Below, one piece after another: positions 5,718 through 50,051 of a stretch of 64,000 bases of DNA. The stretch spans positions 63,736,001 to 63,800,000 of the forward strand of contig NC_043000.1 of assembly GCF_006345805.1 (NCBI RefSeq), written 5' to 3'. Position numbers and translations under genes: made by a program. Positions within the stretch are counted from its first letter, which is position 1. The number at the start of each line of letters is the position of its first letter. The notes beneath the pieces are model-generated. The model did not search any database and was not told the origin of the DNA. It saw only the letters and a list, made by a program, of their open reading frames with translations. This stretch comes from Octopus sinensis. Lineage: Eukaryota.

Positions 5718-6500
5718 AGATATACATACATACATACATACATACATACATACATACATACATACATACATACATACATACAGTCTCCAGAATTTAAGTT
5801 TTGTTGTGACGGACAGGTCTTCTTGAGCACCGCATATCTCCAGTAATTCTGCTCTTTTGCCATCCCTTCAGTGAATTTAATGAGCCTGAGATCAGCTTTC
5901 ACTACTTCGTCTTACGTCTTCCTGGATCTCAATCTTCAACAAACTTCAGACTTCATAAAATCGCCCTTATCCATACGCATTACAAGTCCATACCAGCTTG
6001 GCCTTCCTTCTTGCACACTGCATCTGATTCCTCTTATGCCCAATTTTTCTCCAAACACATTTTTACTTTGTCCTTCATGCTCTCTTAAGTTGCACATCCA
6101 ACAGAATATGCTAGTTTCATCTCTTCCAGATCTTCTCAAGTCTTCTACATTCAGAGACTGTATCACTACTGCAGTATTGCAGTTAATACACAAGAATCAT
6201 ACAATCTACTTTTCACTTTTTGTTTCAGGAGAAAAACCTTTTGTTGCCAACAGGGGTAATAGTTCTCCGAACATTCTCCAGCCTGTATTGCAACCATGCT
6301 TTCAAAACATCTACTACTTCTAGGAGTCCTTCTAAGCTTCTAAGAAAGTATGCTTCCTGTGCGCTCTTAGTGCTTATTGCGCCTAAATTCTTACCACATA
6401 TAAAGTCTACTTTCTCTTTTAATCTGCCTAAGATAATTTGCATTGGATTCACTGTATAGAATTTTTACCTACACCTCTTCTCCATATTGAGTGGGGTCAT
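5718..6500 (-). mobile_element. 5'-truncated RTE-clade LINE 3' end with (TATG)n tail
   Basis: Minus-strand peptides EKVDFICGKNLG, EDLRR..DETSIFCWMCN and EKLGIRGIRCSVQEGRPSWYGLVMRMD match the RTE ORF C-terminus. Frameshifted. The tail appears as (CATA)n on + at 5718-5780. Confidence 0.8.
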
Positions 6501-6583
6501 TTTCCTGAAGGAATTCTGATGAGTGTGAATACTAAAAACTGAAGATTGATGTTTGTGATATTACTTTTATTTCGTGGTTGGCG

Positions 6584-6746
6584 ATTGTTTCAACAATCCT
6601 ATGGTGACTTCCCACATTGTTTATAAACACGTCCATGGACGGCTATGTATATTACATTACAGGGTATGCACGACTAGATCATTCACAATGGACATGGTTA
6701 TAAAAACATAGTGGGAGAATAGTCTCTATGGAATTGCTGAAACAAT
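6584..6746. repeat. Imperfect inverted repeat (arms ~53 and ~59 bp, ~50 bp spacer), MITE-like
   Basis: 6584-6636 is the reverse complement of 6688-6746 apart from scattered mismatches and small indels. Confidence 0.7.
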
Positions 6747-7133
6747 TGACAAGCATGAAATAAAGTTATATCACAGACTCCAATATTCAGTTTATATTTT
6801 ATATATAATATGCGTATATTAAAAGATATCACTCTCCCACTGGATGGAATACTTATTTGTTAATCCTACTATTAACAGAACAGTAAACTATTTAAATCTG
6901 CCGAATTATTGCTTCCACAGTATGAAACTATTATTAGTTTATGTTTATTTACCGTATATACATACATGTGTGTGTGTGTTACCCGTGATCCATTGGGTTA
7001 CTTTGAAAGTCTGAGTTTCCCAGCAACGGAATTTTGTCTCGTGGGTTTTCTTTTCTTTTCCATGTTATTTCGCATTCTTTCAACGAATGTGACATCGAAA
7101 TCACGCGTAAACGGTTCCTTTCCCCAGAAAAGG

Positions 7134-7252
7134 AAAGATTTGGCTGCTATTTCTTGCACGCCCTGCTACCACATAACAGGTATTTCGGGTCCTTTATCGC
7201 AAATACCTGTTACATGGTAGCAGGGCGTGCAGGAAATAGCAGCCAAATCTTT
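7134..7252. repeat. Near-perfect 52-bp inverted repeat with 15-nt loop
   Basis: 7134-7185 pairs with 7201-7252 with only 3 differences. The peptide KDLAAISCTPCYH appears on both strands in the ORF track. Confidence 0.95.
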
Positions 7253-7335
7253 GGAGCTGAAATATGTTGATTGCACTCGAAATTTTTTTGTAATGGTATT
7301 CCCTTGCCAGCGATCTTTCGCTTTGACTCTCAGAA

Positions 7336-7717
7336 CTGTCATCCGCATCAGCTGGTTTTGTTCGTTAATTTCCGTAATTTTTTTTATTTACTTTTGTTTT
7401 AAAGTGAAAGAGAGGAGAAAGTGAAACATGTATGTACGTGTACATGAAATGAACGTGTGGCGGGGGGAGTGCCACTTACACATACATGAGGACACACACA
7501 TTCACTCACTCTCTCTCTCTCTTTTTCTCTCCCTCTTTCCCCTCCCTCTTTTTCTCTTTCTCTTCCTCTCTCTCTCTCTCTCTCTCTCTCTTTCACACAC
7601 ACACGTCCATTTCAAATATACGTACACACATCTTCCACTTTCTCCTCGGTTTCACTTTAAAACAAAAGTAAATAAATAGAAAATTTTTTACGGAAATTTA
7701 CAAACTCCGGATGACAA
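7336..7717. repeat. Inverted repeat (arms ~85 bp) enclosing a CA/CT microsatellite spacer
   Basis: 7336-7423 is the reverse complement of 7636-7717 (e.g. TTTACTTTTGTTTTAAAGTGAAA vs TTTCACTTTAAAACAAAAGTAAA). Confidence 0.75.
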
Positions 7718-8284
7718 GCGAAAGATCGCCATTCACTTGAAAATAATTTTTAAAAAAACATTAAAATATTGTCTGTTTAAAGAAAGCTAAAATATAAATA
7801 CTTACTGTACAAACAACTTACATTTTTGAAATCACATTCAGTTAAAAACATTTCTAAATGATTAAAACATCGTGTACGCTAAAAGTCGACGTTTTTTTTT
7901 TCCTTAGAGAGCACGAAGACTATGTGTGTGTGTATGTCACAAGTAGCGAACGTGCGTTTGTGTTGATTGACACGCTATGACATTCATTATATGTGGGTGT
8001 ATTCTGTATGTGTGTATGCGTATTGACGTCACGGAAGCCATGTTTTTTTTTTGTTTTTTTCAAGGAATAACAAAAATCGTTTAATCGTTTTCATTAATAA
8101 ATAGAGGTCCATATATCACAAAAATTTGTACTGCACTGCCGAAGGTAATTATAAAAATAAATATGCAAAAGTAGTTAAGATAAAATATACTATTTCTGAG
8201 ATAATTCGGGTGCACACAAACATCTCTAGAGTTTTAGTATAATTAAGATATATATATGTATATACATATATATATGTATATATG

Positions 8285-9608: not shown

Positions 9609-10250
9609 AGGCGGAGAGTTGGCAGAATCGTTAGCACGCTGGGCAAAATACTTAGCGGCATTTCGTCGGTCTCTACGTTCTGAGTTCAAATTCCGCCGAG
9701 GTCGACTTTGCCTTTCATCCTTTCGGGGTCGATAAATTAAGTACCAGTTACGCACTGGGGTCGATGTAATCGACTTAATCCGTTTGTCTGTCCTTGTTTG
9801 TCCCCTCTATGTTTAGCTCCTAGTGGGCAATAAAGAAATAAGAATCGTTAGCACGCCGGGCAAAATACTTAGCGGCATTTCGTCGGTCTCTACGTTCTGA
9901 GTTCAAATTCCGCCGAGGTCGATTCTGCTTTTCATCCTTTCGGGTTGATATAATAGACACCAGTTGGATACTGGAGCCGATGTAACCGATTATCCCCTCC
10001 CTTAAAATTTCTGACTTTGTGCCAAAATTTGAAATCAATATTTGAAGAGAAACATTAATACGCCGGGCGAAATGCTTAGCCGCATTTCGTCCGTCTTTAC
10101 ATTCTACGTTCATATTCCGCCGAGGTCGACTTTGCCTTTCATCTCTCTGGAGTCGATAAAGTAAGTACCAGTTAAGCACTGTTGTCGATGTAATCGATTT
10201 GCTCCCTACCTCGAAATTGCAGGCCTCATGCCAAAATTTGAAACCAACAT
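9609..10250 (+). mobile_element. Three tandem tRNA-derived SINEs, family B (GGCAGAATCGTTAGCACGCCGGGC head)
   Basis: Three successive heads (~9609, 9840, 10060), each with GAGTTCAAATTCCGCCGAGGTCGAC-type B-box region and CTTTCATCC core. Confidence 0.85.
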
Positions 10251-10299
10251 TTGAAAAGACTCTATTAACCAACCATCTCAATGTAGGAATTGATAAGAA

Positions 10300-10640
10300 G
10301 GCCAATCTTTTTCAAGAACGTTTGAAGCTACATATAAGCAAGGTATCGCAAGCTTAAAAAAAGAACTCACAGAATCAAACCTCTTGATTCTTTGGGTTGC
10401 TCAAAGCTCCGATCTTAATCCAATAAAACATGTATAGGAATATTTTGAACAGAAACTTACATGTAAAATCGCCGAAAATTAAATCAATTAAAGAGCATTG
10501 GCTGAAGAGTGGATGAACATGGATCAGTCTGTCATTGATAATTTAATCAGATCTATACTTAATCAGACGAAAGCCGTGATATTAACTGAAGGAAGTCCTA
10601 CAAAACACTGAAACTTTCATCCATTTTCAGTAATTTTTCA
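10300..10640 (+). mobile_element. Tc1/mariner transposase C-terminal relic
   Basis: Translation W-V-A-Q-S-S-D-L-N-P-I-K-H-V-*-E-Y-F-E-Q-K-L matches the Tc1 WPxQSPDLNPIEHxW motif. It is followed by LAEEWMNMDQSVIDNLIRS...KAVI. Confidence 0.75.
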
Positions 10641-17889: not shown

Positions 17890-18812
17890 CTTAGTGGAGT
17901 GGTGTCTTGACTTCCATTTTGTTCCAATGCCTGGATGGATTGGATTCTTGGTCGAATGGAGTGTCGATCGAGTTGTGGTGCACAATTTAGTGAAAATAGG
18001 ATTACAGACCTAGATTTTGCTGATGATGAGGTTATTCCTGCTGAGTTTCTAGATGTCTTAAGGAGTGCTCTCCTTTCACTGAGTATTGAGAAAGTGAAAC
18101 CACTTAGCCTTAGAGTATTTTGGGTCAAGACAAAGATTCAGTCCTTCGTTGGCTTCTTGGAGGCCTCCACTTATCTGTCTTTGTTGCGGATGACAATGCC
18201 GAAGTTGTTGGCCGTTTCAGTTATCTCAGCAGCGAGATTCATGGTTGCTTTAGCTGCGAATCTGAAGTCCTAAAAATACGCAGACGAGCTGGTGCAGTTG
18301 TAGACTCATTTGATAAGGGTGTTTGGTGCTACAGATATCTGTGCAGGAGAACAAAGATTCGGGTCTTTAGGTCTCTGGTCCTCTCTGTTCTGCTTTTTAA
18401 GTTGTGAGACTGGGACACGGTCCAAGGCCCTTAAGAGCCACCTCAACTTCTTTGGTAGGATTATGGGTTACCATTTGTCGGATTTCGTATCCAACCAACG
18501 ACTCTACTCAGAACTGGAATGCGACCTGTTACTTGTATGATTGGGGGCACCAACTCAGACTGCTTGGTCATGTTGCTCGATTTTCTGAGTTAGACCCTGC
18601 TTACCATGTCCTCTTCACTGGATCCAGCTGGGTTGACGGCTTGTGTTGGTCGACCACGTACCACATGATTACAGCAAATGAGGAGGTGTTTTGCGGAGAT
18701 GGGGACTGACTGGGACTCTACTTGACGGCTCGCCCAGGAGGACCTGGAAATATAGTGACAAATGGTGAATGCAGCAACGCGCTGCAACAGTGCATGCTAC
18801 AACACCTGACCT
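17890..18812 (+). mobile_element. RTE-clade LINE fragment (RT C-terminal half to 3' end), disrupted
   Basis: MDWIL...ITDLDFADD (RT YADD-type motif), VVGRFSYLSS, TKIRVFRSLVLSVLL and QLRLLGHVAR. Several frameshifts. Confidence 0.85.
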
Positions 18813-23124: not shown

Positions 23125-23379
23125 AATTTTGAATTTAATTACGGACCCCCAGTACTCACTATTTTTGCGGACGACAAGTTGGAAACCACTATACTGTAGA
23201 TTGCCATACTCGTGTATTCACACGATCCCTGAATCCGCAAGATTTTTTGGGCACCTCTTTATCCCATCACCAAATATTCAGGTCAAACCATGCTATAATG
23301 GACCGGACCGTTGCTTTCTTATTGCAACATGACTTGGGAAGACAAGCACTTCCACCAGTCACATTCTCCTCATCAATAT

Positions 23380-23605
23380 TCTGAAGTTTAGGTAGCGAGC
23401 TGGAAAAATTGTGAGCACGCTGGGTAAAAAGTTTAACGCCATCTCGTCTCTTTTTACGTTCTGGGTTCAAATTCAGCCGAGGTTGACATCGTCTTTCATC
23501 CTTTCGTGGTCGGTAAAATAAATACCAGTTGAGCACTGGGGTCGATGCAATCGACTTGCTCCCTCCACCGAAATTACTGCCTTTGTGCCAAAATTTGAAA
23601 TTCAA
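23380..23605 (+). mobile_element. SINE family B copy
   Basis: GCGAGCTGG...GGTTCAAATTCAGCCGAGG...TGTGCCAAAATTTGAAA. Confidence 0.75.
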
Positions 23606-24169
23606 TATCATTCTGAAGTTTAGGTTTTGGTTTTTCTTTGTACGAATTTTTTGTGCCTATTTATTTATTTATTTTTTGCTATAGAAAACAACCGGGTACA
23701 ACTTGGAGTTGACTGTCATCACATAGATATTGCTTATGTTAAATTGTTGTTTTAGTGCAGAGCAAATACGTTCAAGACTTGGCTATACAACCATATACAT
23801 TCTGACTGGAATAATTTGCACGTTACTAGGATATGATTCAATAAATGTGTATCTTCCTTGCCGATTACAATTAATAATTTCCATTTCACTTTACCACCAA
23901 GATGACTGGAGACTGAAACAGAACGAATACTGACGGATATGGAAAGAATCATTTAGCTGAATTCATTCCCTTAATTAAGCTCTATAATAGCTTCCCATTC
24001 TTGTGATGACCCTGTAACATTGACGCATTGACTTTCTATTTACGCGGCTTCCGTTAATCAGTCTTTCTCTTCAATCTGGCGAATTTCTCTGGCCACATTA
24101 TTTCGCTAACCTTGTTAATCTGGCAGAGATATCTGAGATCCTTCTTTTTTTTTTCTTTACACGTTAGAT

Positions 24170-35500: not shown

Positions 35501-35943
35501 TCATCTAGATTTACCTCCAGTAACCCATTTGCATGCATCGTGTTTGTCCTGATTTTCTTCTGTCAACCTGTACATAACTGCACCTTCCATTTTTGTTGTT
35601 TTTGTACTGCTTAAAGGCACGTTTCTTTCCTTCCAAGCTTACTGTTTAAACCATGTTTGTGTTCTCCCATTCAACAGCCTTATCATTGCTGGTACTTGAA
35701 ACTCTTCGGTTGCATATTTGTGTGAATAAAATCGTTTTTCTTTGGAATAGAAAAAAAAAATCTATCTTTATTTCTTCTTTTGCTGGTGTCTCAAATTTAG
35801 GTTAAATCAGTGTTTCTCAAAGAGGAGGCTTATGGGACGGTCGGACAAGTTGCTTTGAGAAAATTTGGTTTAAATGTTTGACAACTCAGCACCGTCCATT
35901 GGACGGGTGGGGGGCATTTTGCTCGTAATAATATAAAGACGCA

Positions 35944-36145
35944 AGGTGGCCAGCAGGCAGAATCGTTAGCACGCCGGGCAAAATGCTTAGCAGTATTTTG
36001 TCCGTCTTTACGTTCTGAGTTCAAATTCCGCCGAGGTCGACTTTCGGTGTCGATAAAATAAGTACCAGTCGAACACTCGGGTCGAGCCAATCGACTCAGC
36101 CCCTTCCCCGAAATTTCTGGCCTTGTGCTAGAATTTGAAACCAAT
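35944..36145 (+). mobile_element. SINE family B copy
   Basis: GGCAGAATCGTTAGCACGCCGGGCAAAATGCTTAGC...GTGCTAGAATTTGAAACC. Confidence 0.8.
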
Positions 36146-37160
36146 AATATGAAATGTTCGTATTATTTGCTTAATAGCAGAAAGAAAGAGAGAGAGAGAG
36201 AGACTTAGATAGGGTAACACATGATGTTTGATTTTATCTTAAATCAATCATCTGCTACCCAACCTAAGGTTCTCTCCCTGTACGTGTGTAGCAAATTTAT
36301 AGAAAACTTGCCTTCGCTCTGTTGTGAATCCCAGCATGAAAGGTGTATTGTGAAGATTTATCAAAACATTGATTAATAACGAGGCGAAAGTCTGCAAAGA
36401 ATTTACCCAGATTTTTTACTACGTTCCATCTGTTAATCGGCTAAAATGGATAAACCGGAACGAGCCTTGAACCGAAAGTACCGGTAAATTGACGCTGTTC
36501 AAATATTCCATCCTATTTTTGGTTAACTTTATTCTACCAACTCTTTCATTCGTTTAGATATAATTAGCGCGTGTGTGTGTGTGCGTGGACGGGAGAGGTA
36601 TGAAGAAAGATGAAATTTTGGGAAATGAGATAAAGGGAGATAAAGAGAGGTGATAGAAATTTGAAGGTGAAAAAGTGAGTGGGTGGAAAAGCAAGGAGAG
36701 AAGATAAGGTAGATGGAAAAATAAGGAGAGAAAAGTGAGGAGGGAAACGTAAAAGAGAAGAGGGTGCATAATGATTTATTTAATCACTTTCTTCCTTAAT
36801 TTTAATTTATGCATAAACATCTTTTTTGTAGAGGAGACAACCTTATTACTGCTTCATTAAATTTTGTAATAATTTGCTGTTTGCTTGCTGAATATCGGTG
36901 ACAGTAAGGGAATCGTTTTCATTCATTAGATATACCATTTAGATATAGAAAAATACCTATGCGATATGGTTCCCATGTTGTTAGGCCTACATGCAATAGC
37001 AGTCAAATCTCCCTCAAATCATATCCTTATGTCTTAAAAATATATGAAAACAAAGGATGGTGCATTGTCTTATACAAAAAGACTGTATGATTATCACTAA
37101 AATGCTTTTCATCATAGATTTGATGTATTGGACCGATTTGGTCTACACACTAACGATAAC

Positions 37161-37365
37161 AAGAAACGTTAGCACGCCGGGCGAAATGTTTAACAGTATT
37201 TCGTCTGTCTACGTTCTGAATTCAAATTCCGCCTTTCATCCTTTCAGGGTCGATTAAATAAGTACCAGTTACACACTGAGGTCAATGTAATCGACATAAT
37301 CCCTTTGTCTGTCCTTGTTTGTTCCCTCTATGTTTAGCCCCCTGTGGTTAATAAAAAAATAAAAA
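37161..37365 (+). mobile_element. SINE family B copy ending ~100 bp upstream of the TASP1 start
   Basis: CGTTAGCACGCCGGGCGAAATG head; tail TTTGTCTGTCCTTGTTTG...AATAAA. Confidence 0.8.
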
Positions 37366-37398
37366 ATATAGCAGACCGCATCAAGAAAGATATGCTTT

Positions 37399-37471
37399 CG
37401 GAAGTGAAAACTTCCTAATTCAAGGGAAATAACTATGATGTTAAAGGGGGAACACTCACAACAAAATGGCG
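37399..37471 (+). promoter_or_regulatory. Housekeeping-type core promoter motifs: inverted ETS pair and a YY1-like motif over the ATG
   Basis: CGGAAGTGAAAACTTCC at 37399-37415 (GGAAGT/ACTTCC inverted) and AAAATGGCG at 37463-37471. Confidence 0.4.
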
Positions 37472-38608
37472 ATGAAACCTTTTGTTGCTGTTCATGCTGG
37501 AGCTGGCTATCATTCTTTTTCTAAAGAAACTGATTATACTAAAACTAGTAAGACTGCCTGCCAAGTTGGAATTATGTCATTGAAAAATAACGTATCAGCA
37601 CTGAATGCTGTAGTTTCAGTTCTAGCAGTTTTGGAAGATGCGACATGTACAAATGCCGGAATTGGCTCGAATTTAACACTAAATGGAACCGTAGAATGTG
37701 ATGCCTCTGTAATGGACGGACATACAAGGGCTTATGGAGCTGTTGGCGCTGTATCTGGTATAAAAAATCCTGTATGTATAGCAAAAACATTAATTGATGC
37801 TCAGCTGAAAGGATTATCTCTTGGTAGAGTCCCTCCGAGTATTCTAGTCGGACGAGGAGCTTATGACTGGGCTCTGAAGCAAGGTTTAAACCATGTGTCC
37901 GATAGCATTCTCGTAACAGAATCATCACAAAAGACTTATGAAAACTACAAACAAAAGCTTTTGGCACTTGATAACCGGCTTATTTGTAAAGCTAAAAGAA
38001 AATATCTTGAAAAGAAATCGGTTATAAATCATAGAAAAGATTCGTCTTCCAACATTGAAGAAGTTGAAAACAGTGATGACATTTCTCAGCACCAAGATAC
38101 AGTCGGTGCCATATGTGTAGATAAACAAGGGAATATTGCTTGTGCTGTATCTAGTGGTGGACTATCTCTAAAACAACCTGGTCGGCTAGGTTCCGCAGCT
38201 GTTTTTGGTGCTGGTTGCTGGGCGGCTAATAATACTGCGGATTCAGCTGGTATTGGGGTTGTAACATCTGGCACCGGTGAATATCTTATCAGGACCATTT
38301 TTGCAAAAGAATTTGCCGAGTGTATTCTCTCTGAAGAGGATACAACATTAGCTGTTAACAAAGCTTTTGAGCGGAAGTTTTTCGGATCCCCTTTACTGAG
38401 CAATATTAAAGATAAGTATGCTGGTGCATTGCTCATAAAATTAGTAGAAGCTAATGAAATTGAACTTGTGTCGGCACATTGCACCTCAAGTATGTGCGTC
38501 GGCTATGCAATTGATGGAAAAGAACCAAAAGCATATATATCAAGACTCTCAAGCTCACAAAAACCTGGAAAGTCTTTAAGTATTCAAGGGAAACATTTCT
38601 TTTTATGA
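37466..38608 (+). CDS. TASP1: Threonine aspartase 1 (Taspase 1, Ntn-hydrolase, type 2 asparaginase family), 380 aa, single exon
   Basis: Motifs VAVHAGAG, LEDATCTNAGIGSNL, VECDASVMDG, GIKNP, GRVPP, autocleavage site QD/TVGA (D211/T212), SSGGLSLKQPGRLG..FGAGCWA and TSGTGE. A basic NLS-like stretch KAKRKYLEKK is present. The ORF is uninterrupted. Confidence 0.95.
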   Translation: MAMKPFVAVHAGAGYHSFSKETDYTKTSKTACQVGIMSLKNNVSALNAVVSVLAVLEDATCTNAGIGSNLTLNGTVECDASVMDGHTRAYGAVGAVSGIKNPVCIAKTLIDAQLKGLSLGRVPPSILVGRGAYDWALKQGLNHVSDSILVTESSQKTYENYKQKLLALDNRLICKAKRKYLEKKSVINHRKDSSSNIEEVENSDDISQHQDTVGAICVDKQGNIACAVSSGGLSLKQPGRLGSAAVFGAGCWAANNTADSAGIGVVTSGTGEYLIRTIFAKEFAECILSEEDTTLAVNKAFERKFFGSPLLSNIKDKYAGALLIKLVEANEIELVSAHCTSSMCVGYAIDGKEPKAYISRLSSSQKPGKSLSIQGKHFFL

Positions 38609-43802: not shown

Positions 43803-44431
43803 TTATTACCTCCGCCTTAGCGGAGGTATTGTTTTCAGTCATATCTCAAGAACCACTGGATGGATTCTGATGAAACTTTCATGGATGTTTGGCTTCGTGA
43901 CTGGCATGAACTGATTAGATTTTAGGATCGATCTAGTACCAGACAAGGATTCTGGATTATTTGTTATATTTACTTTACACGATTACGGTCTTACATTGAC
44001 TTCAAGTCTTTCTCAATTTTCTCCCTTTAGGCTGTTTCCAAAGTTTTATTTTCGTTTCTCTATTATTAATTTTACTCATATCTCTATCTTAGAAGAAATT
44101 GATGGATAAAGAAATCAAACTATATAAACAAACGGCAGCAAAACCTTTCAGAAATTAAATAACACTAACATGTTTTTATAATATATATATTATATATGCA
44201 TATTAACACTTTACAGTATATTTCCATATATATATACATCGATGAGGATTCTGGATTATTTTTCTGGTTTCTTTACTTAATTTTTGAGAGTGGTCGGGTT
44301 CATTTTTAGTATTCTCGTTTATGAGAGCAGTCAAGTGTATTTCAGATATTCTCATTTTAAAAATCTCCAGCTAATCATTGAGAGGTCACTGGTGTTGCCT
44401 TGGCAGAGGTTTGCACTCTCAGAGTGCTTTT
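43803..44431 (+). mobile_element. Helentron/DINE-like non-autonomous element
   Basis: 5' TTATTACCTCCGC-CTTA-GCGGAGGT (subTIR plus inverted repeat), 3' subTIR GGCAGAGGT, then stem-loop GCACTCT-C-AGAGTGC and TTTT. Confidence 0.7.
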
Positions 44432-44439
44432 GGAAGTAA

Positions 44440-45700
44440 AGTTGACCATGGAAGAATTTGAATGTGAAGACAGACAAAATGCTGCTAGGCATTTCTTCTG
44501 CTGTGCTAACAATTCTGCCAACCTTAATAATAATGATAATAATAATAATAATAATGATCCTTTCTGCTATAGACACAAAGTTTGAAATTTGGGGGAGGGG
44601 ACTGTAATTGACTTCCTTCTCACTTAAAAAATTCCTAGTTTTGTACCGAGGTGGCAAGCTGGCAGAATCGGTAGCACACTGGGCAAAATGCTTCACTGCA
44701 TTTCTTCCATCTTTACATTCTGAGTTCAAATTCTGTCATGGTTAACTTTACCCTTTCATCCTTTCAGGGTCAATAAAATAAGTACTAGCTGTGTACTGTG
44801 GTCGATGTACTCAACTGTCCCCTCCCCCAAATGTCAGGCTTTATGCCTATAGCAGAAAGGATTATTATTATTATTATTATAAAGGTGATATGTTGGCAGA
44901 ATTGTTAGCACATCCGAAGAAATACCTCACAGCATTTTGTCTGTCTTTACATTCAAATTCTGCCATGGTCAACTTAACTTCCATCCTTTCAAGGTCAATG
45001 AAATAAATACCAGTTGCACACTGTGTCAAGGTAGTAACTAGCCATCCCCCACCAAAAAAATTTTAGGCCTTGGGCCTATAGTGGGAGGTATTATTATTAT
45101 CATTAAAACAGTGAACTGGCACAGCCATTAGCATGTTGAACAAAATTGTTTGACAGCATTTCTTCCAGATCTTTACATTGTTGGTTCAAGACCTATGGAA
45201 GTCAACTTTGCCATTCATCATTTTGGGGTCAATAAAATAAGTATTAGTTTAGCACAGTAATTCACTTACGTCTCACTTAAAAAATTCCTGGTTTTGTACC
45301 AAATAGAAAGAATTTGAGATAAGTTGACAGAACTGTTAGCGCACAGGGCAAAATGCTGAGTGGCATTTTGTTTCTCCTTAGCTTTGCCTTTCATTCTTTC
45401 ATGGCCAATACAATAAGTACCAGTTGAGCACTGGGGTTGATGTAATCAACTAACCACCTCCCCCAAAATTTCCAGCTTTGTGTCTAAAGGAGAAAGAATT
45501 ATTATTATTTGATGGTTTCAATTCTTAATGTTCTGAGTTCAAATCTAGTCAAAGTCAACTTGCCTTTCATCCTTTCAGAAACAGTCAAGTACTCGGATTG
45601 ATTTAACCAACTGATTTCTCTACCACCACCACTAAATATCTGGTTTTGTGTTAATCACAGAAAGGATTATTATTGTTGTTGTTAGGGTGGTGAATTGACA
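44440..45700. mobile_element. Cluster of ~6-7 decayed family B SINEs separated by (ATT)n/(AAT)n tails
   Basis: Repeated GGCAGAAT..TTAGCAC heads, CTTTCATCCTTTC cores and GAAAGGATTATTATT tails. Confidence 0.7.
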
Positions 45701-46109: not shown

Positions 46110-46838
46110 GATGATGATAATAATAATGATGAAATTATTGTATACAGTGCTCAGGTGCACCACAACTTGTCAAAAGTGCATACAAAGCATATGCAGTAAT
46201 GTACAAATGTCTGGGAAGTGAACAGTGTATGAGTCAGATACATACTTGCATGTGTATGGAGGGGAGAAAATCAGGTGTAGTGTTGGCGAATCTCAGGAAG
46301 CATGGAAGTTTTGAAGGATGCAGTGCTCCGACAACTAACAACTGATGCCAGCAGTTTGTTCCATACTTCAGCAACTCTTAGCGTGAAAAAATGTTTCCGA
46401 AAGTCATGGGAGCTGTGCTGTTTTCTGACTTTGTAAACATGTCCATGGGTGTTAGACAGGTGGAGCTTGAAAAGGTGCTCTGAGTTATTGTTAGTCAGAT
46501 GGTTAATAATTTTATGGGTGTCTGCCAAGTCAGCTGCCAGACGTCAGAGTTTCAATAGATCCATGCCCAGGGAAGTAAAGCGTTCAGAATATGGCAAATG
46601 CCTGATGGAGGGTATTCTCTTGGTTGCACATCGCTGAACAGTTTCCAGACGATTAATATCCTGGGCAAGATAGGGATTCCAGACTGGTGATGTAAATTCC
46701 AGCTGAGGCCGCACCATAGCTATATAAAGCTTCAGATAGATAGCCAGAGAGCAGCTCACAAAGGACTTGGGAAGTGATGCCAAGACACCCTCAGCCTTCT
46801 TGGCAATTTTAGCAATGTGTTTTGTCCAATGCAAATTG
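46110..46838 (-). mobile_element. 5'-truncated CR1/L2-type LINE 3' end, antisense within an intron
   Basis: Minus-strand LYIAMVRPQLEFTSPVWNPYL..DINRLETVQRCATKRIP..LPYSER and RKHFFTLRVAEVWNKL, the classic CR1/L2 ORF2 C-terminus. Confidence 0.9.
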
Positions 46839-47736
46839 CACACACACACACAGCGAACTGCTTTCAGTTTCTATCTGCCAAATCCATGCACAAAGTTGAA
46901 GACACTTACCCAAGGTGCCATGCAGTGGGCTTGAAATCAGAATCGTGTTGTTAGGTAGTAAACCTCTCACCACACTGCCATGCCTGTGCCTATCATAACT
47001 GTTGATAATAATGAAGCCAACTAGAAAGCCACTATATGGTCCCTCAACCTATTAGAAATAGTAGCCAAATCACACTGTGTTAAATAAAGGTACATTGGAT
47101 AGTGTTGTCCTTTCATAGACAAATATTACAGGACAGTCACAACTGGAATATCTTTGGATCATCAGTCTGTTCAGTTAAGGCTGATCTTATGCTAAATAAC
47201 AATAACAACCATTTTTTTTTTTAATGGCTAGTTTTTTTATTATTTCTTTAACCATTTTGTTGCTATATTTCTGTTGAAATACACTACTATTGTTTCAGTC
47301 AATTTTGAAAATAAGGAACAATTTGTTAAAATAACTTTGTCATTATTAAGTTGGTGTTTAGAACATAAATAAACATGAAGTTTCAATGGAAGTCTTTAAT
47401 TTTGATCCCTTTAAAGCAGGTAGTTTGCACCATTGAATCATAAAGGCAGTCCCTGGTGGATTGTTAGCAAAAGGATTAAATCATTCCACTTCAGTGTTCT
47501 GTTGCTCTGATTTTGTCAGAGCTCTCCCAATGCAAGTCTGCATTCATCTGTTTGATTTTTGACACACGCTGTATCTTTCATAAAACCAATCTAGGATACA
47601 TTATTGCCAAAGTTAAGATTTTGTTTTCTTTTGTTTTATATTGGGTTATTTTATGCTTTGGACATTTCCAGATGTTAGTGAAATGTGTATTTATGTATAC
47701 TGATGTTTTTTTTTTTTGCCTTTTATTTTAGTGCTT

Positions 47737-48984: not shown

Positions 48985-49405
48985 TCTCTCTCTTTACACT
49001 TTACTCTTTTACTTGTTTCAGTCATTTGACTGCGGCCATGCTGGAGCACCGCCTTTAGTCGAGCAACTCGACCCTGGGACTTATTCTTTGTAAGCCCAGT
49101 ACTTATTCTGTCGATCTCTTTTGCCGAACCGCTAAGTGACGGGGACGTAAATACACCAGCATCGGTTGTCAAGCAATGCTAGGGGGACAAACACAGACAC
49201 ACAAACATATACACACACATACATATATATACATATATACGACAGGCTTCTTTCAGTTTCCGTCTACCAAATCCACTCACAAGGCTTTGGTCGGCCCGAG
49301 GCTATAGCAGAAGACACTTACCCAAGATGTCACGCAGTGGGACTGTTCCCGGAACCATGTGGTTGGTTAGCAAGCTACTTACCACACAGCCACTACTGCG
49401 CCTCA
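48985..49405 (-). mobile_element. Full-length SINE family A
   Basis: Reverse complement of the complete consensus; closely similar to the copy at 49650. Confidence 0.9.
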
Positions 49406-49649: not shown

Positions 49650-50051
49650 AGGCGCAGGAGTGGCTGTGTGGTAAGTACCTTGCTTACCAACCATATGGTT
49701 CCGGGTTCAGTCCCACTGCGTGGCACCTTGGGCAAGTATCTTCTACTATAGCCCCGGGCCGACCAAAGCCTTGTGAGTGGATTTGGTAGATGGAAACTGA
49801 AAGAAGCCCGTCGTATATATGTATATATATATGCGTGTTTGTGTGTCTGTGTTTGTCCCCTAGCATTGCTTGACAACCGATGCTGGTGTGTTTATGTCCC
49901 CGTTACTTAGCAGTTCGGCAAAAGAGACCGATAGAATAAGTACTGGGCTTACAAAAGAATAAGTCCCGGGGTCGAGTTGTGCGATTAAAGGCGGTGCTCC
50001 AGCATGGCCGCAGTCAAATGACTGAAACAAGTAAAAAGAGTAAAAAGAGTA
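49650..50051 (+). mobile_element. Full-length SINE family A
   Basis: Intact A-box TGGCTGTGTGG, B-box GGTTCAGTCCC, core and tail. Confidence 0.9.

What the first reader, a model, noticed from the sequence alone, without database searches (positions are those of the whole stretch)
7134..7252. Near-perfect 52-bp hairpin: candidate miRNA/hpRNA precursor or ADAR substrate
The arms differ at only 3 positions. On the minus-strand transcript two become G-U wobbles (one mismatch remains); on plus, one is a wobble. The loop is 15 nt. The sequence is unique in the window, fairly GC-balanced and lacks TIR/TSD hallmarks. Coleoid cephalopods have many lineage-specific miRNAs and heavy A-to-I editing (established), so an expressed hairpin here could be a new small-RNA locus. 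A recent local inverted duplication is the alternative.
Basis: partly seen in the sequence, partly recalled or inferred. Interest (0 to 1): 0.7.

Follow-up and report, generated by a model that had tools for sequence, protein, structure and literature searches.

The report
Young perfect hairpin inside octopus repeat
The 52-bp hairpin is real, but it is the internal inverted repeat of a non-coding repeat family found in several copies in another octopus, and only this copy has near-perfect arms, so it is more likely a recently re-copied piece of repetitive DNA than a conserved microRNA gene.

Summary
Arms 7134-7185 and 7201-7252 pair at 49 of 52 positions around a 15-nt loop. It is the only non-microsatellite hairpin of this size in the window and far beyond chance. 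The window is Octopus sinensis chromosome CM016862.1.

The sequence is not unique in octopods. Translating a chance ORF across the hairpin recovered five diverged paralogous copies from genomic contigs of one related octopodid. All five share about 150 nt to the left of the hairpin, the hairpin itself and at least 30 nt to its right, so it is not a stand-alone MITE. In those copies the arms have decayed independently: 62-79% Watson-Crick pairs, no covariation above shuffles.

At arm positions 22 and 47 every other copy is mismatched, while the window's right arm carries the complement of its left arm. The three arm differences are transitions, and two are decay of one ancestral CpG.

Best reading: a repeat-borne inverted repeat whose arms were recently made identical. 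This happened either by a template switch or arm-to-arm conversion, or because this is a young copy. It is now decaying neutrally.

The stem is about 20 bp longer than the Microprocessor prefers, and no Rfam family matches above threshold. Expression, small RNAs and editing could not be tested. Interest is low.

The parts
7134..7185 (.). Left arm of the hairpin (52 nt)
   Evidence: At the family's asymmetric sites (arm positions 22, 47, and also 27, 28) this arm carries the left-arm state shared by the other copies.
7186..7200 (.). 15-nt spacer/loop, CGGGTCCTTTATCGC. It differs from the family consensus loop at one of 13 scorable sites.
7201..7252 (.). Right arm (52 nt). At arm positions 22 (7231) and 47 (7206) it carries the complement of the left arm, whereas all five other copies are mismatched there.
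6982..7133 (.). Left flank shared by all family copies (segment A). The hairpin is therefore internal to a longer repeat.
   Evidence: blastn 73-80% identity to L006, L007, L008, L010 and L011; alignment A2
6955..6981 (.). (ACAT)n(GT)n microsatellite at the left edge of the repeat. Four of six copies have a CA/GT run here, and sequences further left are unrelated between copies.
7253..7290 (.). Right flank shared by the family copies (segment B, ...GGAGCTGAAATATGTTGATTGCAC...)
7306..7460 (.). Left arm of a second, older inverted repeat (IR-C). It is shared with copy L011.
7461..7599 (.). Spacer of IR-C, in which the (CT)n/(CA)n microsatellite occupies about 7505-7605
7600..7735 (.). Right arm of IR-C (about 83% identical to the left arm, with indels). 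Its inner part is shared with copy L006.
7732..8200 (.). Segment D. It is homologous to L006 (75%, alignable to about 8200) and to L008 (90% over 7732-7840), which shows the repeated unit is at least about 1.2 kb in some copies.

Best explanation
The hairpin is the internal inverted repeat of a non-coding dispersed repeat family of octopodid genomes. The core shared by all copies is at least about 300 bp and lies at window ~6982-7290. Some copies share about 1.2 kb, up to ~8200. The family's ancestral element already carried this inverted repeat, with a few mismatches. In old copies the two arms have drifted apart independently, so the structure is not under selection across the family. In the O. 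sinensis copy the arms are almost identical because they were made identical recently. One route is that one arm (most simply the right) was re-synthesised as the reverse complement of the other, by an intramolecular template switch during replication or by arm-to-arm gene conversion. The other route is that this copy descends recently from a master element with a perfect hairpin. Since then the copy has picked up three transitions, two of them decay of one CpG, which is ordinary neutral decay.

Shown: the hairpin exists; paralogous copies with different flanks exist; the arms have decayed in those copies; covariation is absent; two sites are paired only in the window copy.

Inferred: the template-switch or conversion mechanism, its direction, its age (after the split from the related species), and the lack of function.

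If the locus is transcribed, a 52-bp near-perfect duplex would be an incidental Dicer or ADAR substrate, but nothing here shows transcription.
For: (1) The hairpin is real and non-random.

(2) phmmer with the chance 78-aa ORF across the hairpin found 5 ORF translations (E 1.7e-16 to 1e-6) covering both the flank and both arms. All lie on about 1-kb Logan contigs of one sequencing project, and four of the five were fetched from the same run.

(3) These copies are 73-80% identical to window 6982-7290 and 68-73% identical to each other, and their upstream flanks are unrelated.

(4) Watson-Crick pairs per copy: window 49/52; others 35/52, 38/52, 30/38, 32/52 and 24/34. MFE is -91 kcal/mol (z -20.6) for the window against -26 to -48 (z -1.5 to -6.1) for the others.

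(5) Covariation test: 83.2% of cells are paired against 82.3 +/- 0.8 in shuffles (83 of 500 as high); score 0.158 against 0.140 (52 of 500).

(6) Arm positions 22 and 47 are paired only in the window. Elsewhere the left arm is T and the right arm (read as reverse complement) is A in every copy at position 22. At position 47 the left arm is G or A and the right arm is T or C. The window's right arm matches its left arm at both, through two transversions.

(7) The arms are more alike than independent decay predicts from flank divergence. The window differs from the consensus at 18 of 158 flank sites. P(<=3 mismatches in 52) is 0.002-0.006 for d = 0.10-0.114 (0.066 at d = 0.07). Hairpin 3/104 against flanks 18/158 gives Fisher p = 0.018.

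(8) Arm positions 39-40 are CG in the family consensus. The window has CA in the left arm and TG (read as reverse complement) in the right arm, the classic pattern of CpG decay.

(9) Template switching is documented both to create perfect stems and to fix the pairing of existing stems in a single event (PMC8794818, PMC10710096).
Against: No true orthologue of the locus was recovered, so the ancestral state rests on paralogues from another species. A perfect ancestral hairpin with two mutations in the other species' master copy is equally parsimonious at positions 22 and 47. Only six sequences are available. The consensus in the flanks rests on five diverged copies, which may inflate the estimate of flank divergence. 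The class of the repeat (TE type, termini, TSD) and its copy number in O. sinensis are unknown, and only one copy lies in this 64 kb. Selection for pairing in this one copy would produce the same compensatory pattern. No expression data could be consulted, so lack of function is an inference.
Confidence: 0.68

Rival explanations
1. The locus produces small RNAs. It would be a young, lineage-specific miRNA-like or hairpin endo-siRNA precursor exapted from the repeat, or a hyper-edited ADAR substrate within a longer transcript.
For: A 52-bp near-perfect duplex with an 8-15-nt loop folds very stably on either strand. Structure-only similarity to palindromic mir families: mir-5444 at 53.6 bits, mir-3914 at 46.4 and mir-3116 at 44.1. 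Two sites are paired only in this copy, which could reflect selection for pairing. Octopus has many young miRNA families, and its A-to-I editing is concentrated in introns and 3'UTRs, which are richer in hairpin structures (PMC9699675). Template-switch hairpins have given rise to new miRNAs in primates (PMC10710096).
Against: All Rfam hits are far below the gathering scores (90, 97 and 65) and occur on both strands. The whole window has no hit at gathering thresholds. The helix is about 52-55 bp against the preferred ~35 bp. The structure has decayed in every other family copy and shows no covariation. Two of the three arm differences are CpG decay that breaks pairing on the + strand. The only recognisable gene in the window is 30 kb away. 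No transcript or small-RNA evidence was obtainable.
Confidence: 0.12
2. The 119-bp palindrome is itself a stand-alone MITE or foldback transposon inserted at this site.
For: The element is a full-length inverted repeat, and related copies exist in another octopod.
Against: In all five related copies homology continues about 150 nt to the left and at least 30 nt to the right of the palindrome, so the element's ends are not the ends of the inverted repeat. There is no TSD beyond GG/GG, and that dinucleotide is part of the family consensus. A MITE that inserted into the family's progenitor before it amplified cannot be excluded.
Confidence: 0.04
3. A purely de novo local inverted duplication of previously unique sequence, with no pre-existing inverted repeat.
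For: The arms are nearly identical and the spacer is short, and the sequence is unique in the window.
Against: All five paralogues in the other species carry both arms in the same arrangement with the same loop. The inverted repeat therefore predates this copy.
Confidence: 0.03
4. An assembly or sequencing artefact, such as a palindromic chimera.
For: None specific. Long-read and amplification artefacts can create inverted duplications.
Against: The same inverted repeat, in decayed form, is present in independent short-read contigs of another species, and L006 recurs in five samples. The arms differ at three sites, which an artefactual copy would not.
Confidence: 0.01

Closest known systems
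Template-switch-mutation (TSM) hairpins (Monttinen and Loytynoja, PNAS 2022, PMC8794818; Monttinen et al., PNAS 2023, PMC10710096)
   Same: A short-spacer reverse-complement repeat with near-perfect pairing. The pairing of an existing imperfect stem appears to have been fixed at several sites at once, with one arm taking the complement of the other (arm positions 22 and 47, possibly 27 and 28).
   Different: No orthologous outgroup or ancestral reconstruction was available here, only paralogues from another species. The four switch points cannot be placed, and no expression is shown.
Repeat- or MITE-derived palindromic miRNA precursors (for example human mir-548 from Made1, recalled from memory; Rfam mir-3914, mir-3116 and mir-5444 as structural look-alikes)
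   Same: A long, almost perfect palindrome embedded in repetitive DNA that folds on both strands. It gives sub-threshold, structure-driven covariance-model hits on both strands.
   Different: It is not a stand-alone MITE, has no TSD and has no sequence similarity to those families. Scores are far below the gathering thresholds, and there is no small-RNA evidence.
Canonical animal miRNA genes as curated in MirGeneDB, including the octopus set of Zolotarov et al. 2022 (PMC9699675)
   Same: A hairpin in an octopus genome, in a lineage known for many young miRNA families.
   Different: The stem is 52-55 bp instead of about 35 bp and almost free of bulges. The perfect form is probably younger than the split from the related octopodid. 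Homologous copies have lost the structure. Zolotarov et al. required a novel miRNA to be present in a second octopus species, and that could not be checked here.
Drosophila-type hpRNA / endo-siRNA hairpins (from memory)
   Same: A perfect intramolecular dsRNA that would suit Dicer better than Drosha.
   Different: hpRNAs are usually hundreds of bp long and derive from inverted duplications of their target genes. Here the arm is 52 bp and comes from a repeat. A dedicated siRNA pathway acting on such hairpins in octopus was not examined.
Arm-to-arm gene conversion in genomic palindromes (for example primate sex-chromosome palindromes, from memory)
   Same: The arms are kept or made more similar to each other than to paralogous copies or than the flanks would predict.
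   Different: The scale is 52 bp against kilobases to megabases, and this looks like a single event rather than ongoing conversion.

Membership tests
Canonical animal miRNA precursor | Imperfect hairpin with at least 16 paired nucleotides between the two arms | tested here: met
   49 of 52 pairs. This is trivially satisfied by any long inverted repeat.
Canonical animal miRNA precursor | Stem of about 35 bp flanked by single-stranded segments, with an unstructured apical loop of 10 nt or more (as summarised in PMC10710096) | tested here: not met
   The helix is continuous over about 52-55 bp with an effective apical loop of 8 nt (+) or 10 nt (-). On the + strand the base of the stem is extended by further pairs.
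Canonical animal miRNA precursor | Match to a described miRNA family | tested here: not met
   Rfam 15 gives 0 hits in the window at gathering thresholds. The best sub-threshold hits are 53.6, 46.4 and 44.1 bits against thresholds of 90, 97 and 65, on both strands.
Canonical animal miRNA precursor | Hairpin and mature sequence conserved in a second species (the criterion of Zolotarov et al. 2022) | tested here: inconclusive
   No orthologue was recovered. Five paralogous copies in a related octopodid have decayed arms (62-79% Watson-Crick pairs) and show no covariation.
Canonical animal miRNA precursor | Reads of 20-26 nt from both arms with 2-nt 3' offsets and homogeneous 5' ends | not testable with these tools
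   No small-RNA data are reachable.
MITE / foldback transposon | Terminal inverted repeats | tested here: met
   The whole 119-bp unit is an inverted repeat.
MITE / foldback transposon | Target-site duplication directly flanking the inverted repeats | tested here: not met
   The flanks are CCAGAAAAGG | GGAGCTGAAA and share only GG/GG. These bases belong to the family consensus.
MITE / foldback transposon | Copies share the element only, and homology stops at the ends of the inverted repeats | tested here: not met
   Homology runs about 150 nt to the left and at least 30 nt (up to about 950 nt) to the right in all five copies.
Dispersed repeat family (class undetermined) | Several diverged copies within one genome, each in a different sequence context | tested here: met
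   There are five distinct contigs (L006, L007, L008/L009, L010, L011). Four of the five were fetched from run SRR11869391. They are 68-73% identical to each other and have unrelated upstream flanks.
Dispersed repeat family (class undetermined) | Defined termini, TSD or coding capacity that would assign a transposon class | tested here: inconclusive
   The left edge lies at a CA/GT microsatellite (~6955-6985) in four of six copies, and the right edge was not reached. There are no Pfam domains nearby, no tRNA-like head and no Rfam hit in the loci.
Template-switch-generated or -repaired hairpin | The derived arm equals the reverse complement of the neighbouring arm at sites where the ancestral or outgroup state was unpaired | tested here: inconclusive
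   This is met at arm positions 22 and 47, and compatibly at 27 and 28, when paralogues serve as the outgroup. However, no orthologue was available, and a perfect ancestor is equally parsimonious.
hpRNA / endo-siRNA hairpin | Long inverted repeat (hundreds of bp) yielding 21-nt siRNAs | tested here: not met
   The arm is only 52 bp. siRNA production is not testable here.
ADAR substrate | dsRNA of roughly 30 bp or more within an expressed transcript, with clustered A-to-G mismatches | not testable with these tools
   The structural requirement is met. Transcription and editing could not be examined.

The most novel reading that the evidence does not exclude
A decayed hairpin carried by a repeat was restored to a perfect 52-bp stem in one template-switch event in the O. 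sinensis/O. vulgaris lineage and is now transcribed and diced. This would be a very young, species-group-specific miRNA-like or hairpin-siRNA locus. It would give a concrete example of how the raw material for the coleoid miRNA expansion arises, a source that Zolotarov et al. 2022 say is not known.
Probability: 0.07. Interest if true: 0.55.

Novelty: new member of a known kind. Interest (0 to 1): 0.2.

Why it matters
As it stands this is ordinary: an inverted repeat inside repetitive, non-coding octopus DNA. Its modest value is as a clean case. Paralogues show that an old, imperfect stem has been made perfect in one copy, which is the template-switch or conversion process proposed to seed new hairpin RNA genes. 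If small-RNA data showed processing, it would link repeat-borne hairpins and template switching to the unexplained origin of the many young octopus miRNAs. If not, it serves as a caution that near-perfect long hairpins in cephalopod genomes are more likely young repeat structures than miRNA genes.

Tried and rejected
- Rfam at gathering thresholds on the whole window gave nothing. In E-value mode it gave only structure-driven, two-strand, sub-threshold mir hits. The five related loci gave no Rfam hit at E <= 0.01.
- I searched the supplements of Zolotarov et al. 2022 for six 11-12-mers of the arms and found nothing. The files hold k-mer tables, not precursor sequences, so this negative result is uninformative.
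- Exact look-ups of 20 chance ORFs around the hairpin, with literal and with M starts, found none in the protein collection.
- The search for homologous proteins with the 78-aa ORF failed because the relatives are longer than 1.75 times the query. An alignment query returned only the same proteins.
- I first read the related-species contigs as RNA-seq, because the taspase contig seemed to skip 240 nt of the window. This was rejected. The gap is a SINE-like insertion with an A-rich tail in O. sinensis, contigs end at microsatellites, and contig numbers reach 4.8 million. The runs are therefore most likely whole-genome shotgun data and say nothing about transcription.
- One metagenome scan with a degenerate 32-mer found nothing.
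- A Pfam scan of 122 stop-to-stop ORFs of at least 75 aa found only the Asparaginase_2 gene, so there is no transposase or reverse transcriptase to classify the repeat. ARAGORN found no tRNA-like sequence.
- The stand-alone MITE, de novo duplication and assembly-artefact readings were rejected (see the rival explanations).
- I could not identify the orthologue. L006 is colinear with the window up to ~8200 at 75-77%, close to the ~80% expected for orthologous non-coding DNA, but its left flank is hidden by a SINE-like repeat. L008 is 90% identical in segment D but 78% in the hairpin part.

Full report
**1. The observation**

The sequence at 7134-7252 is a 52-nt inverted repeat with a 15-nt spacer, and 49 of 52 positions are complementary. 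The three exceptions are 7154T/7232G, 7172C/7214A and 7173A/7213C, all transitions. As RNA the + strand folds at -98.0 kcal/mol (159 nt, z = -15.7) and the - strand at -97.5 (z = -14.2). None of 200 dinucleotide-preserving shuffles folds as well.

Three (+) or two (-) extra pairs form inside the spacer, leaving an apical loop of 8-10 nt.

My own scan for stems with loops of 3-40 nt found six hairpins in the 64 kb. Five are (TA)n-like microsatellites, and this one is the only complex sequence. Neither the arm nor its flanks recurs in the window.

**2. Where the window comes from**

The window is AT-rich (36.7% GC) and full of microsatellites. Its only ORF with a recognisable protein domain is an intact 380-aa Asparaginase_2 / threonine aspartase-like gene at 37466-38608.

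That protein is 100% identical to an NCBI protein on record CM016862.1 of GCA_006345805.1, which is Octopus sinensis (PMC10700109). The window is therefore CM016862.1:63,736,001-63,800,000, and the hairpin is at 63,743,134-63,743,252. The O. bimaculoides protein is 96% identical and that of Argonauta hians 82%.

A set of Logan contigs from runs SRR11869384-94 carries a 93% identical protein. Against the window these contigs are 93.0% identical in the CDS, 81.9% in the 3' flank and 78.9% upstream. They therefore come from a more distant octopodid whose orthologous non-coding DNA is about 80% identical to O. sinensis.

I first took these runs for RNA-seq, but that was wrong. The apparent intron (window 37143-37380) is a SINE-like insertion with an A-rich tail that the other species lacks. 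The contigs break at microsatellites, and contig numbers run to 4.8 million. They are most likely whole-genome shotgun data and give no information on transcription.

**3. The hairpin is not unique: it sits inside a repeat family**

No DNA search of cephalopod genomes is available here, so I translated the chance 78-aa ORF that spans the hairpin (7034-7267, +) and searched 1.84 billion protein representatives. Five accidental ORFs matched (E 1.7e-16 to 1e-6, 54-63% identity) over residues 6-75, which cover the left flank and both arms.

All five lie on about 1-kb contigs of the SRR118693xx project, and four of the five were fetched from the same run. At DNA level:
- The copies match window ~6982-7290 at 73-80% identity.
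- They match each other at 68-73%.
- Their upstream sequences are unrelated to the window and to each other. In four of six copies a CA/GT microsatellite marks the left edge.
- To the right, L011 continues like the window to 7434. L006 is alignable with the window to ~8200 apart from indels. L008 matches 7732-7840 at 90%.

So the hairpin is an internal module of a dispersed, non-coding repeat. The core shared by all copies is at least about 300 bp, and some copies share about 1.2 kb.

This detection route only sees copies in which a long accidental ORF spans the element. The ORFs were evidently called with TGA read as Trp. The true copy number is therefore probably much higher than five, but I could not measure it. 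I could not assign the family to a transposon class: there is no Pfam domain, no tRNA-like head, no Rfam hit and no clear TSD.

**4. The structure is not conserved in the family**

Watson-Crick pairs per copy, on the window's 52 pairs, are: window 49/52, L006 35/52, L007 38/52, L008 30/38, L010 32/52, L011 24/34. L008 and L011 also have deletions in one arm. The MFE of the 119-nt unit is -91 kcal/mol (z -20.6) for the window and -26 to -48 (z -1.5 to -6.1) for the others.

Counting pairs on the alignment gives 83.2% paired cells against 82.3 +/- 0.8 in shuffles (83 of 500 as high), and a covariation score of 0.158 against 0.140 (52 of 500). This is what independent neutral decay of two arms looks like. 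It is not a selected RNA structure.

**5. Why this copy is nearly perfect**

Several observations bear on this.

- The window copy lies closest to the family consensus: 10% from a leave-one-out consensus, against 18-24% for the others.

- At arm positions 22 and 47 the window is the only paired copy. At position 22 every other copy has T in the left arm and A in the right arm (read as reverse complement). At position 47 the left arm is G or A and the right arm is T or C. The window's right arm (7231, 7206) carries exactly the complement of its left arm, which requires two transversions. Positions 27 and 28 behave the same way, but 27 is a CpG site and could reflect recurrent decay.

- The arms are more alike than the flanks predict. 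The window differs from the majority of the other copies at 18 of 158 flank sites. If the arms had evolved independently at that rate, about 10-11 mismatches would be expected, and three are seen. P is 0.002-0.006 for d = 0.10-0.114 and 0.066 for d = 0.07. Against a ten-sample consensus the arms differ at only three single-arm sites (3/104), compared with 18/158 in the flanks (Fisher p = 0.018).

- The differences that do exist look neutral. Positions 39-40 are CG in the family consensus. The window now reads CA in the left arm and TG in the right arm (as reverse complement), which is two deaminations of the same ancestral CpG. The third difference is an A-to-G transition in the right arm.

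The simplest account is that the two arms were made identical recently. The arm-to-arm difference is 5.8%, compared with roughly 20% between the two species in orthologous non-coding DNA, which places the event after that split. There are two possible routes:
- An intramolecular template switch or arm-to-arm conversion overwrote the right arm with the complement of the left. This process is documented to create perfect stems and to fix existing stems in one event (PMC8794818, PMC10710096).
- This copy descends recently from a master element with a perfect stem.

With paralogues as the only outgroup these two cannot be separated, and selection for pairing in this single copy cannot be excluded.

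**6. The neighbourhood**

The region has two more local inverted repeats:
- 7306-7460 / 7600-7735, about 83% identical with indels, around a CT/CA microsatellite.
- 6533-6796, about 70% identical.

Elsewhere in the window there are several other inverted pairs, some of them made of SINE-like copies. Local inverted duplication is therefore common in this genome. The annotated gene range that contains the Asparaginase_2 ORF starts at window ~33.5 kb on the + strand, and the ORF itself lies 30 kb from the hairpin. Whether any annotated transcript covers the hairpin is unknown.

**7. Comparison with known kinds**

- Canonical miRNA precursor: it fails the stem-length expectation (about 35 bp, PMC10710096), has no family match and shows no conservation of structure. 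Read evidence is untestable here.
- MITE: it fails, because homology extends beyond the inverted repeat on both sides and there is no TSD.
- Template-switch hairpins and repeat-derived palindromic miRNA precursors: it resembles these most closely. If transcribed it would suit Dicer or ADAR better than Drosha.
- Octopus context: A-to-I editing is concentrated in introns and 3'UTRs, which are richer in hairpin structures. Novel octopus miRNAs were accepted only if present in both O. vulgaris and O. bimaculoides (PMC9699675). This hairpin's perfect form may be too young to pass that filter.

**8. Verdict**

The hairpin is real, and its interpretation is ordinary: a young, near-perfect copy of an inverted repeat that belongs to a dispersed octopodid repeat. 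It is most likely functionless, with a small residual chance (about 0.1) of being an expressed small-RNA or editing substrate. The decisive data are the syntenic loci in O. vulgaris, O. bimaculoides and A. fangsiao, the genome-wide copy number, and small-RNA and RNA-seq mapping.

Noticed in passing
window 37466-38608 (+): An intact 380-aa threonine aspartase-like gene (Pfam Asparaginase_2, E 5e-52) in a single coding exon. It is 100% identical to an annotated O. sinensis protein, 96% to O. bimaculoides, 93% to the SRR118693xx species and 82% to Argonauta hians. CDS identity of 93% against about 80% in the flanks indicates purifying selection. Longer cephalopod-like hits (458-481 aa, 59-66% identity over half the query) suggest this may be an old intronless paralogue of the canonical taspase gene. 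It lies inside the annotated range of another + strand gene (357-aa product) that starts at window ~33,520.
   Followed up: partly
window 37143-37380: A roughly 240-bp SINE-like insertion with an A-rich tail (AATAAAAAAATAAAAAA). It is present in O. sinensis just upstream of the taspase-like ORF and absent from the orthologous contigs of the related species (an empty site). A possible 9-10-bp target duplication (AxCAAGAAA) flanks it.
   Followed up: partly
window 7306-7460 and 7600-7735: A second, older inverted repeat (arms of about 150 nt, about 83% identical, with indels) flanks a (CT)n/(CA)n microsatellite 55 bp to the right of the hairpin. Its left arm is shared with copy L011, and the inner part of its right arm with L006.
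   Followed up: partly
window 6533-6796: A third local inverted repeat (about 70% identity over 272 nt, with a core of 6566-6609 / 6721-6764 at 80%) lies just left of the repeat family's edge. Three inverted structures of different apparent ages fall within 1.2 kb.
   Followed up: no
window 49000-49403 and 49650-50044: A large inverted repeat with 406-nt arms at 90.6% identity and a 247-nt spacer. Part of it is homologous to a SINE-like repeat that occurs many times in the window (for example 4430, 14596, 27845, 52179) and in locus L006 1-160.
   Followed up: no
window 8024-8033; L006 ~885-895: A perfect CRE-like palindrome, TGACGTCA (within TTGACGTCA), is conserved between the window and paralogue L006 inside segment D of the repeat, while the surrounding sequence is only about 75% identical.
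   Followed up: no
window 9820-10305, 23267-23611, 35830-36144, 44352-44729 (all -): A recurrent SINE-like element whose chance translation contains RPRRNLNSERKDGRNAAKHFARRAND. Two copies in inverted orientation form the inverted repeat at 44431-44983.
   Followed up: no
window 5936-6193 (-), 18404-18709 (+), 46544-46849 (-): ORF fragments with motifs that I recall from the C-terminus of LINE ORF2 proteins (for example ...WYGLVMRMD..., ...LLGHVARF...). Pfam gave no hit at E <= 0.01 for the two it was run on (18404-18706 and 46547-46849), so this rests on memory only.
   Followed up: partly
loci L006-L011 (Logan contigs of SRR118693xx): The accidental ORFs that led to the paralogues do not translate with the standard code and are rich in W at TGA positions. 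The collection's gene caller apparently used a TGA=Trp code on this AT-rich eukaryotic DNA, which explains why only ORFs of 138 aa or more were on record.
   Followed up: partly
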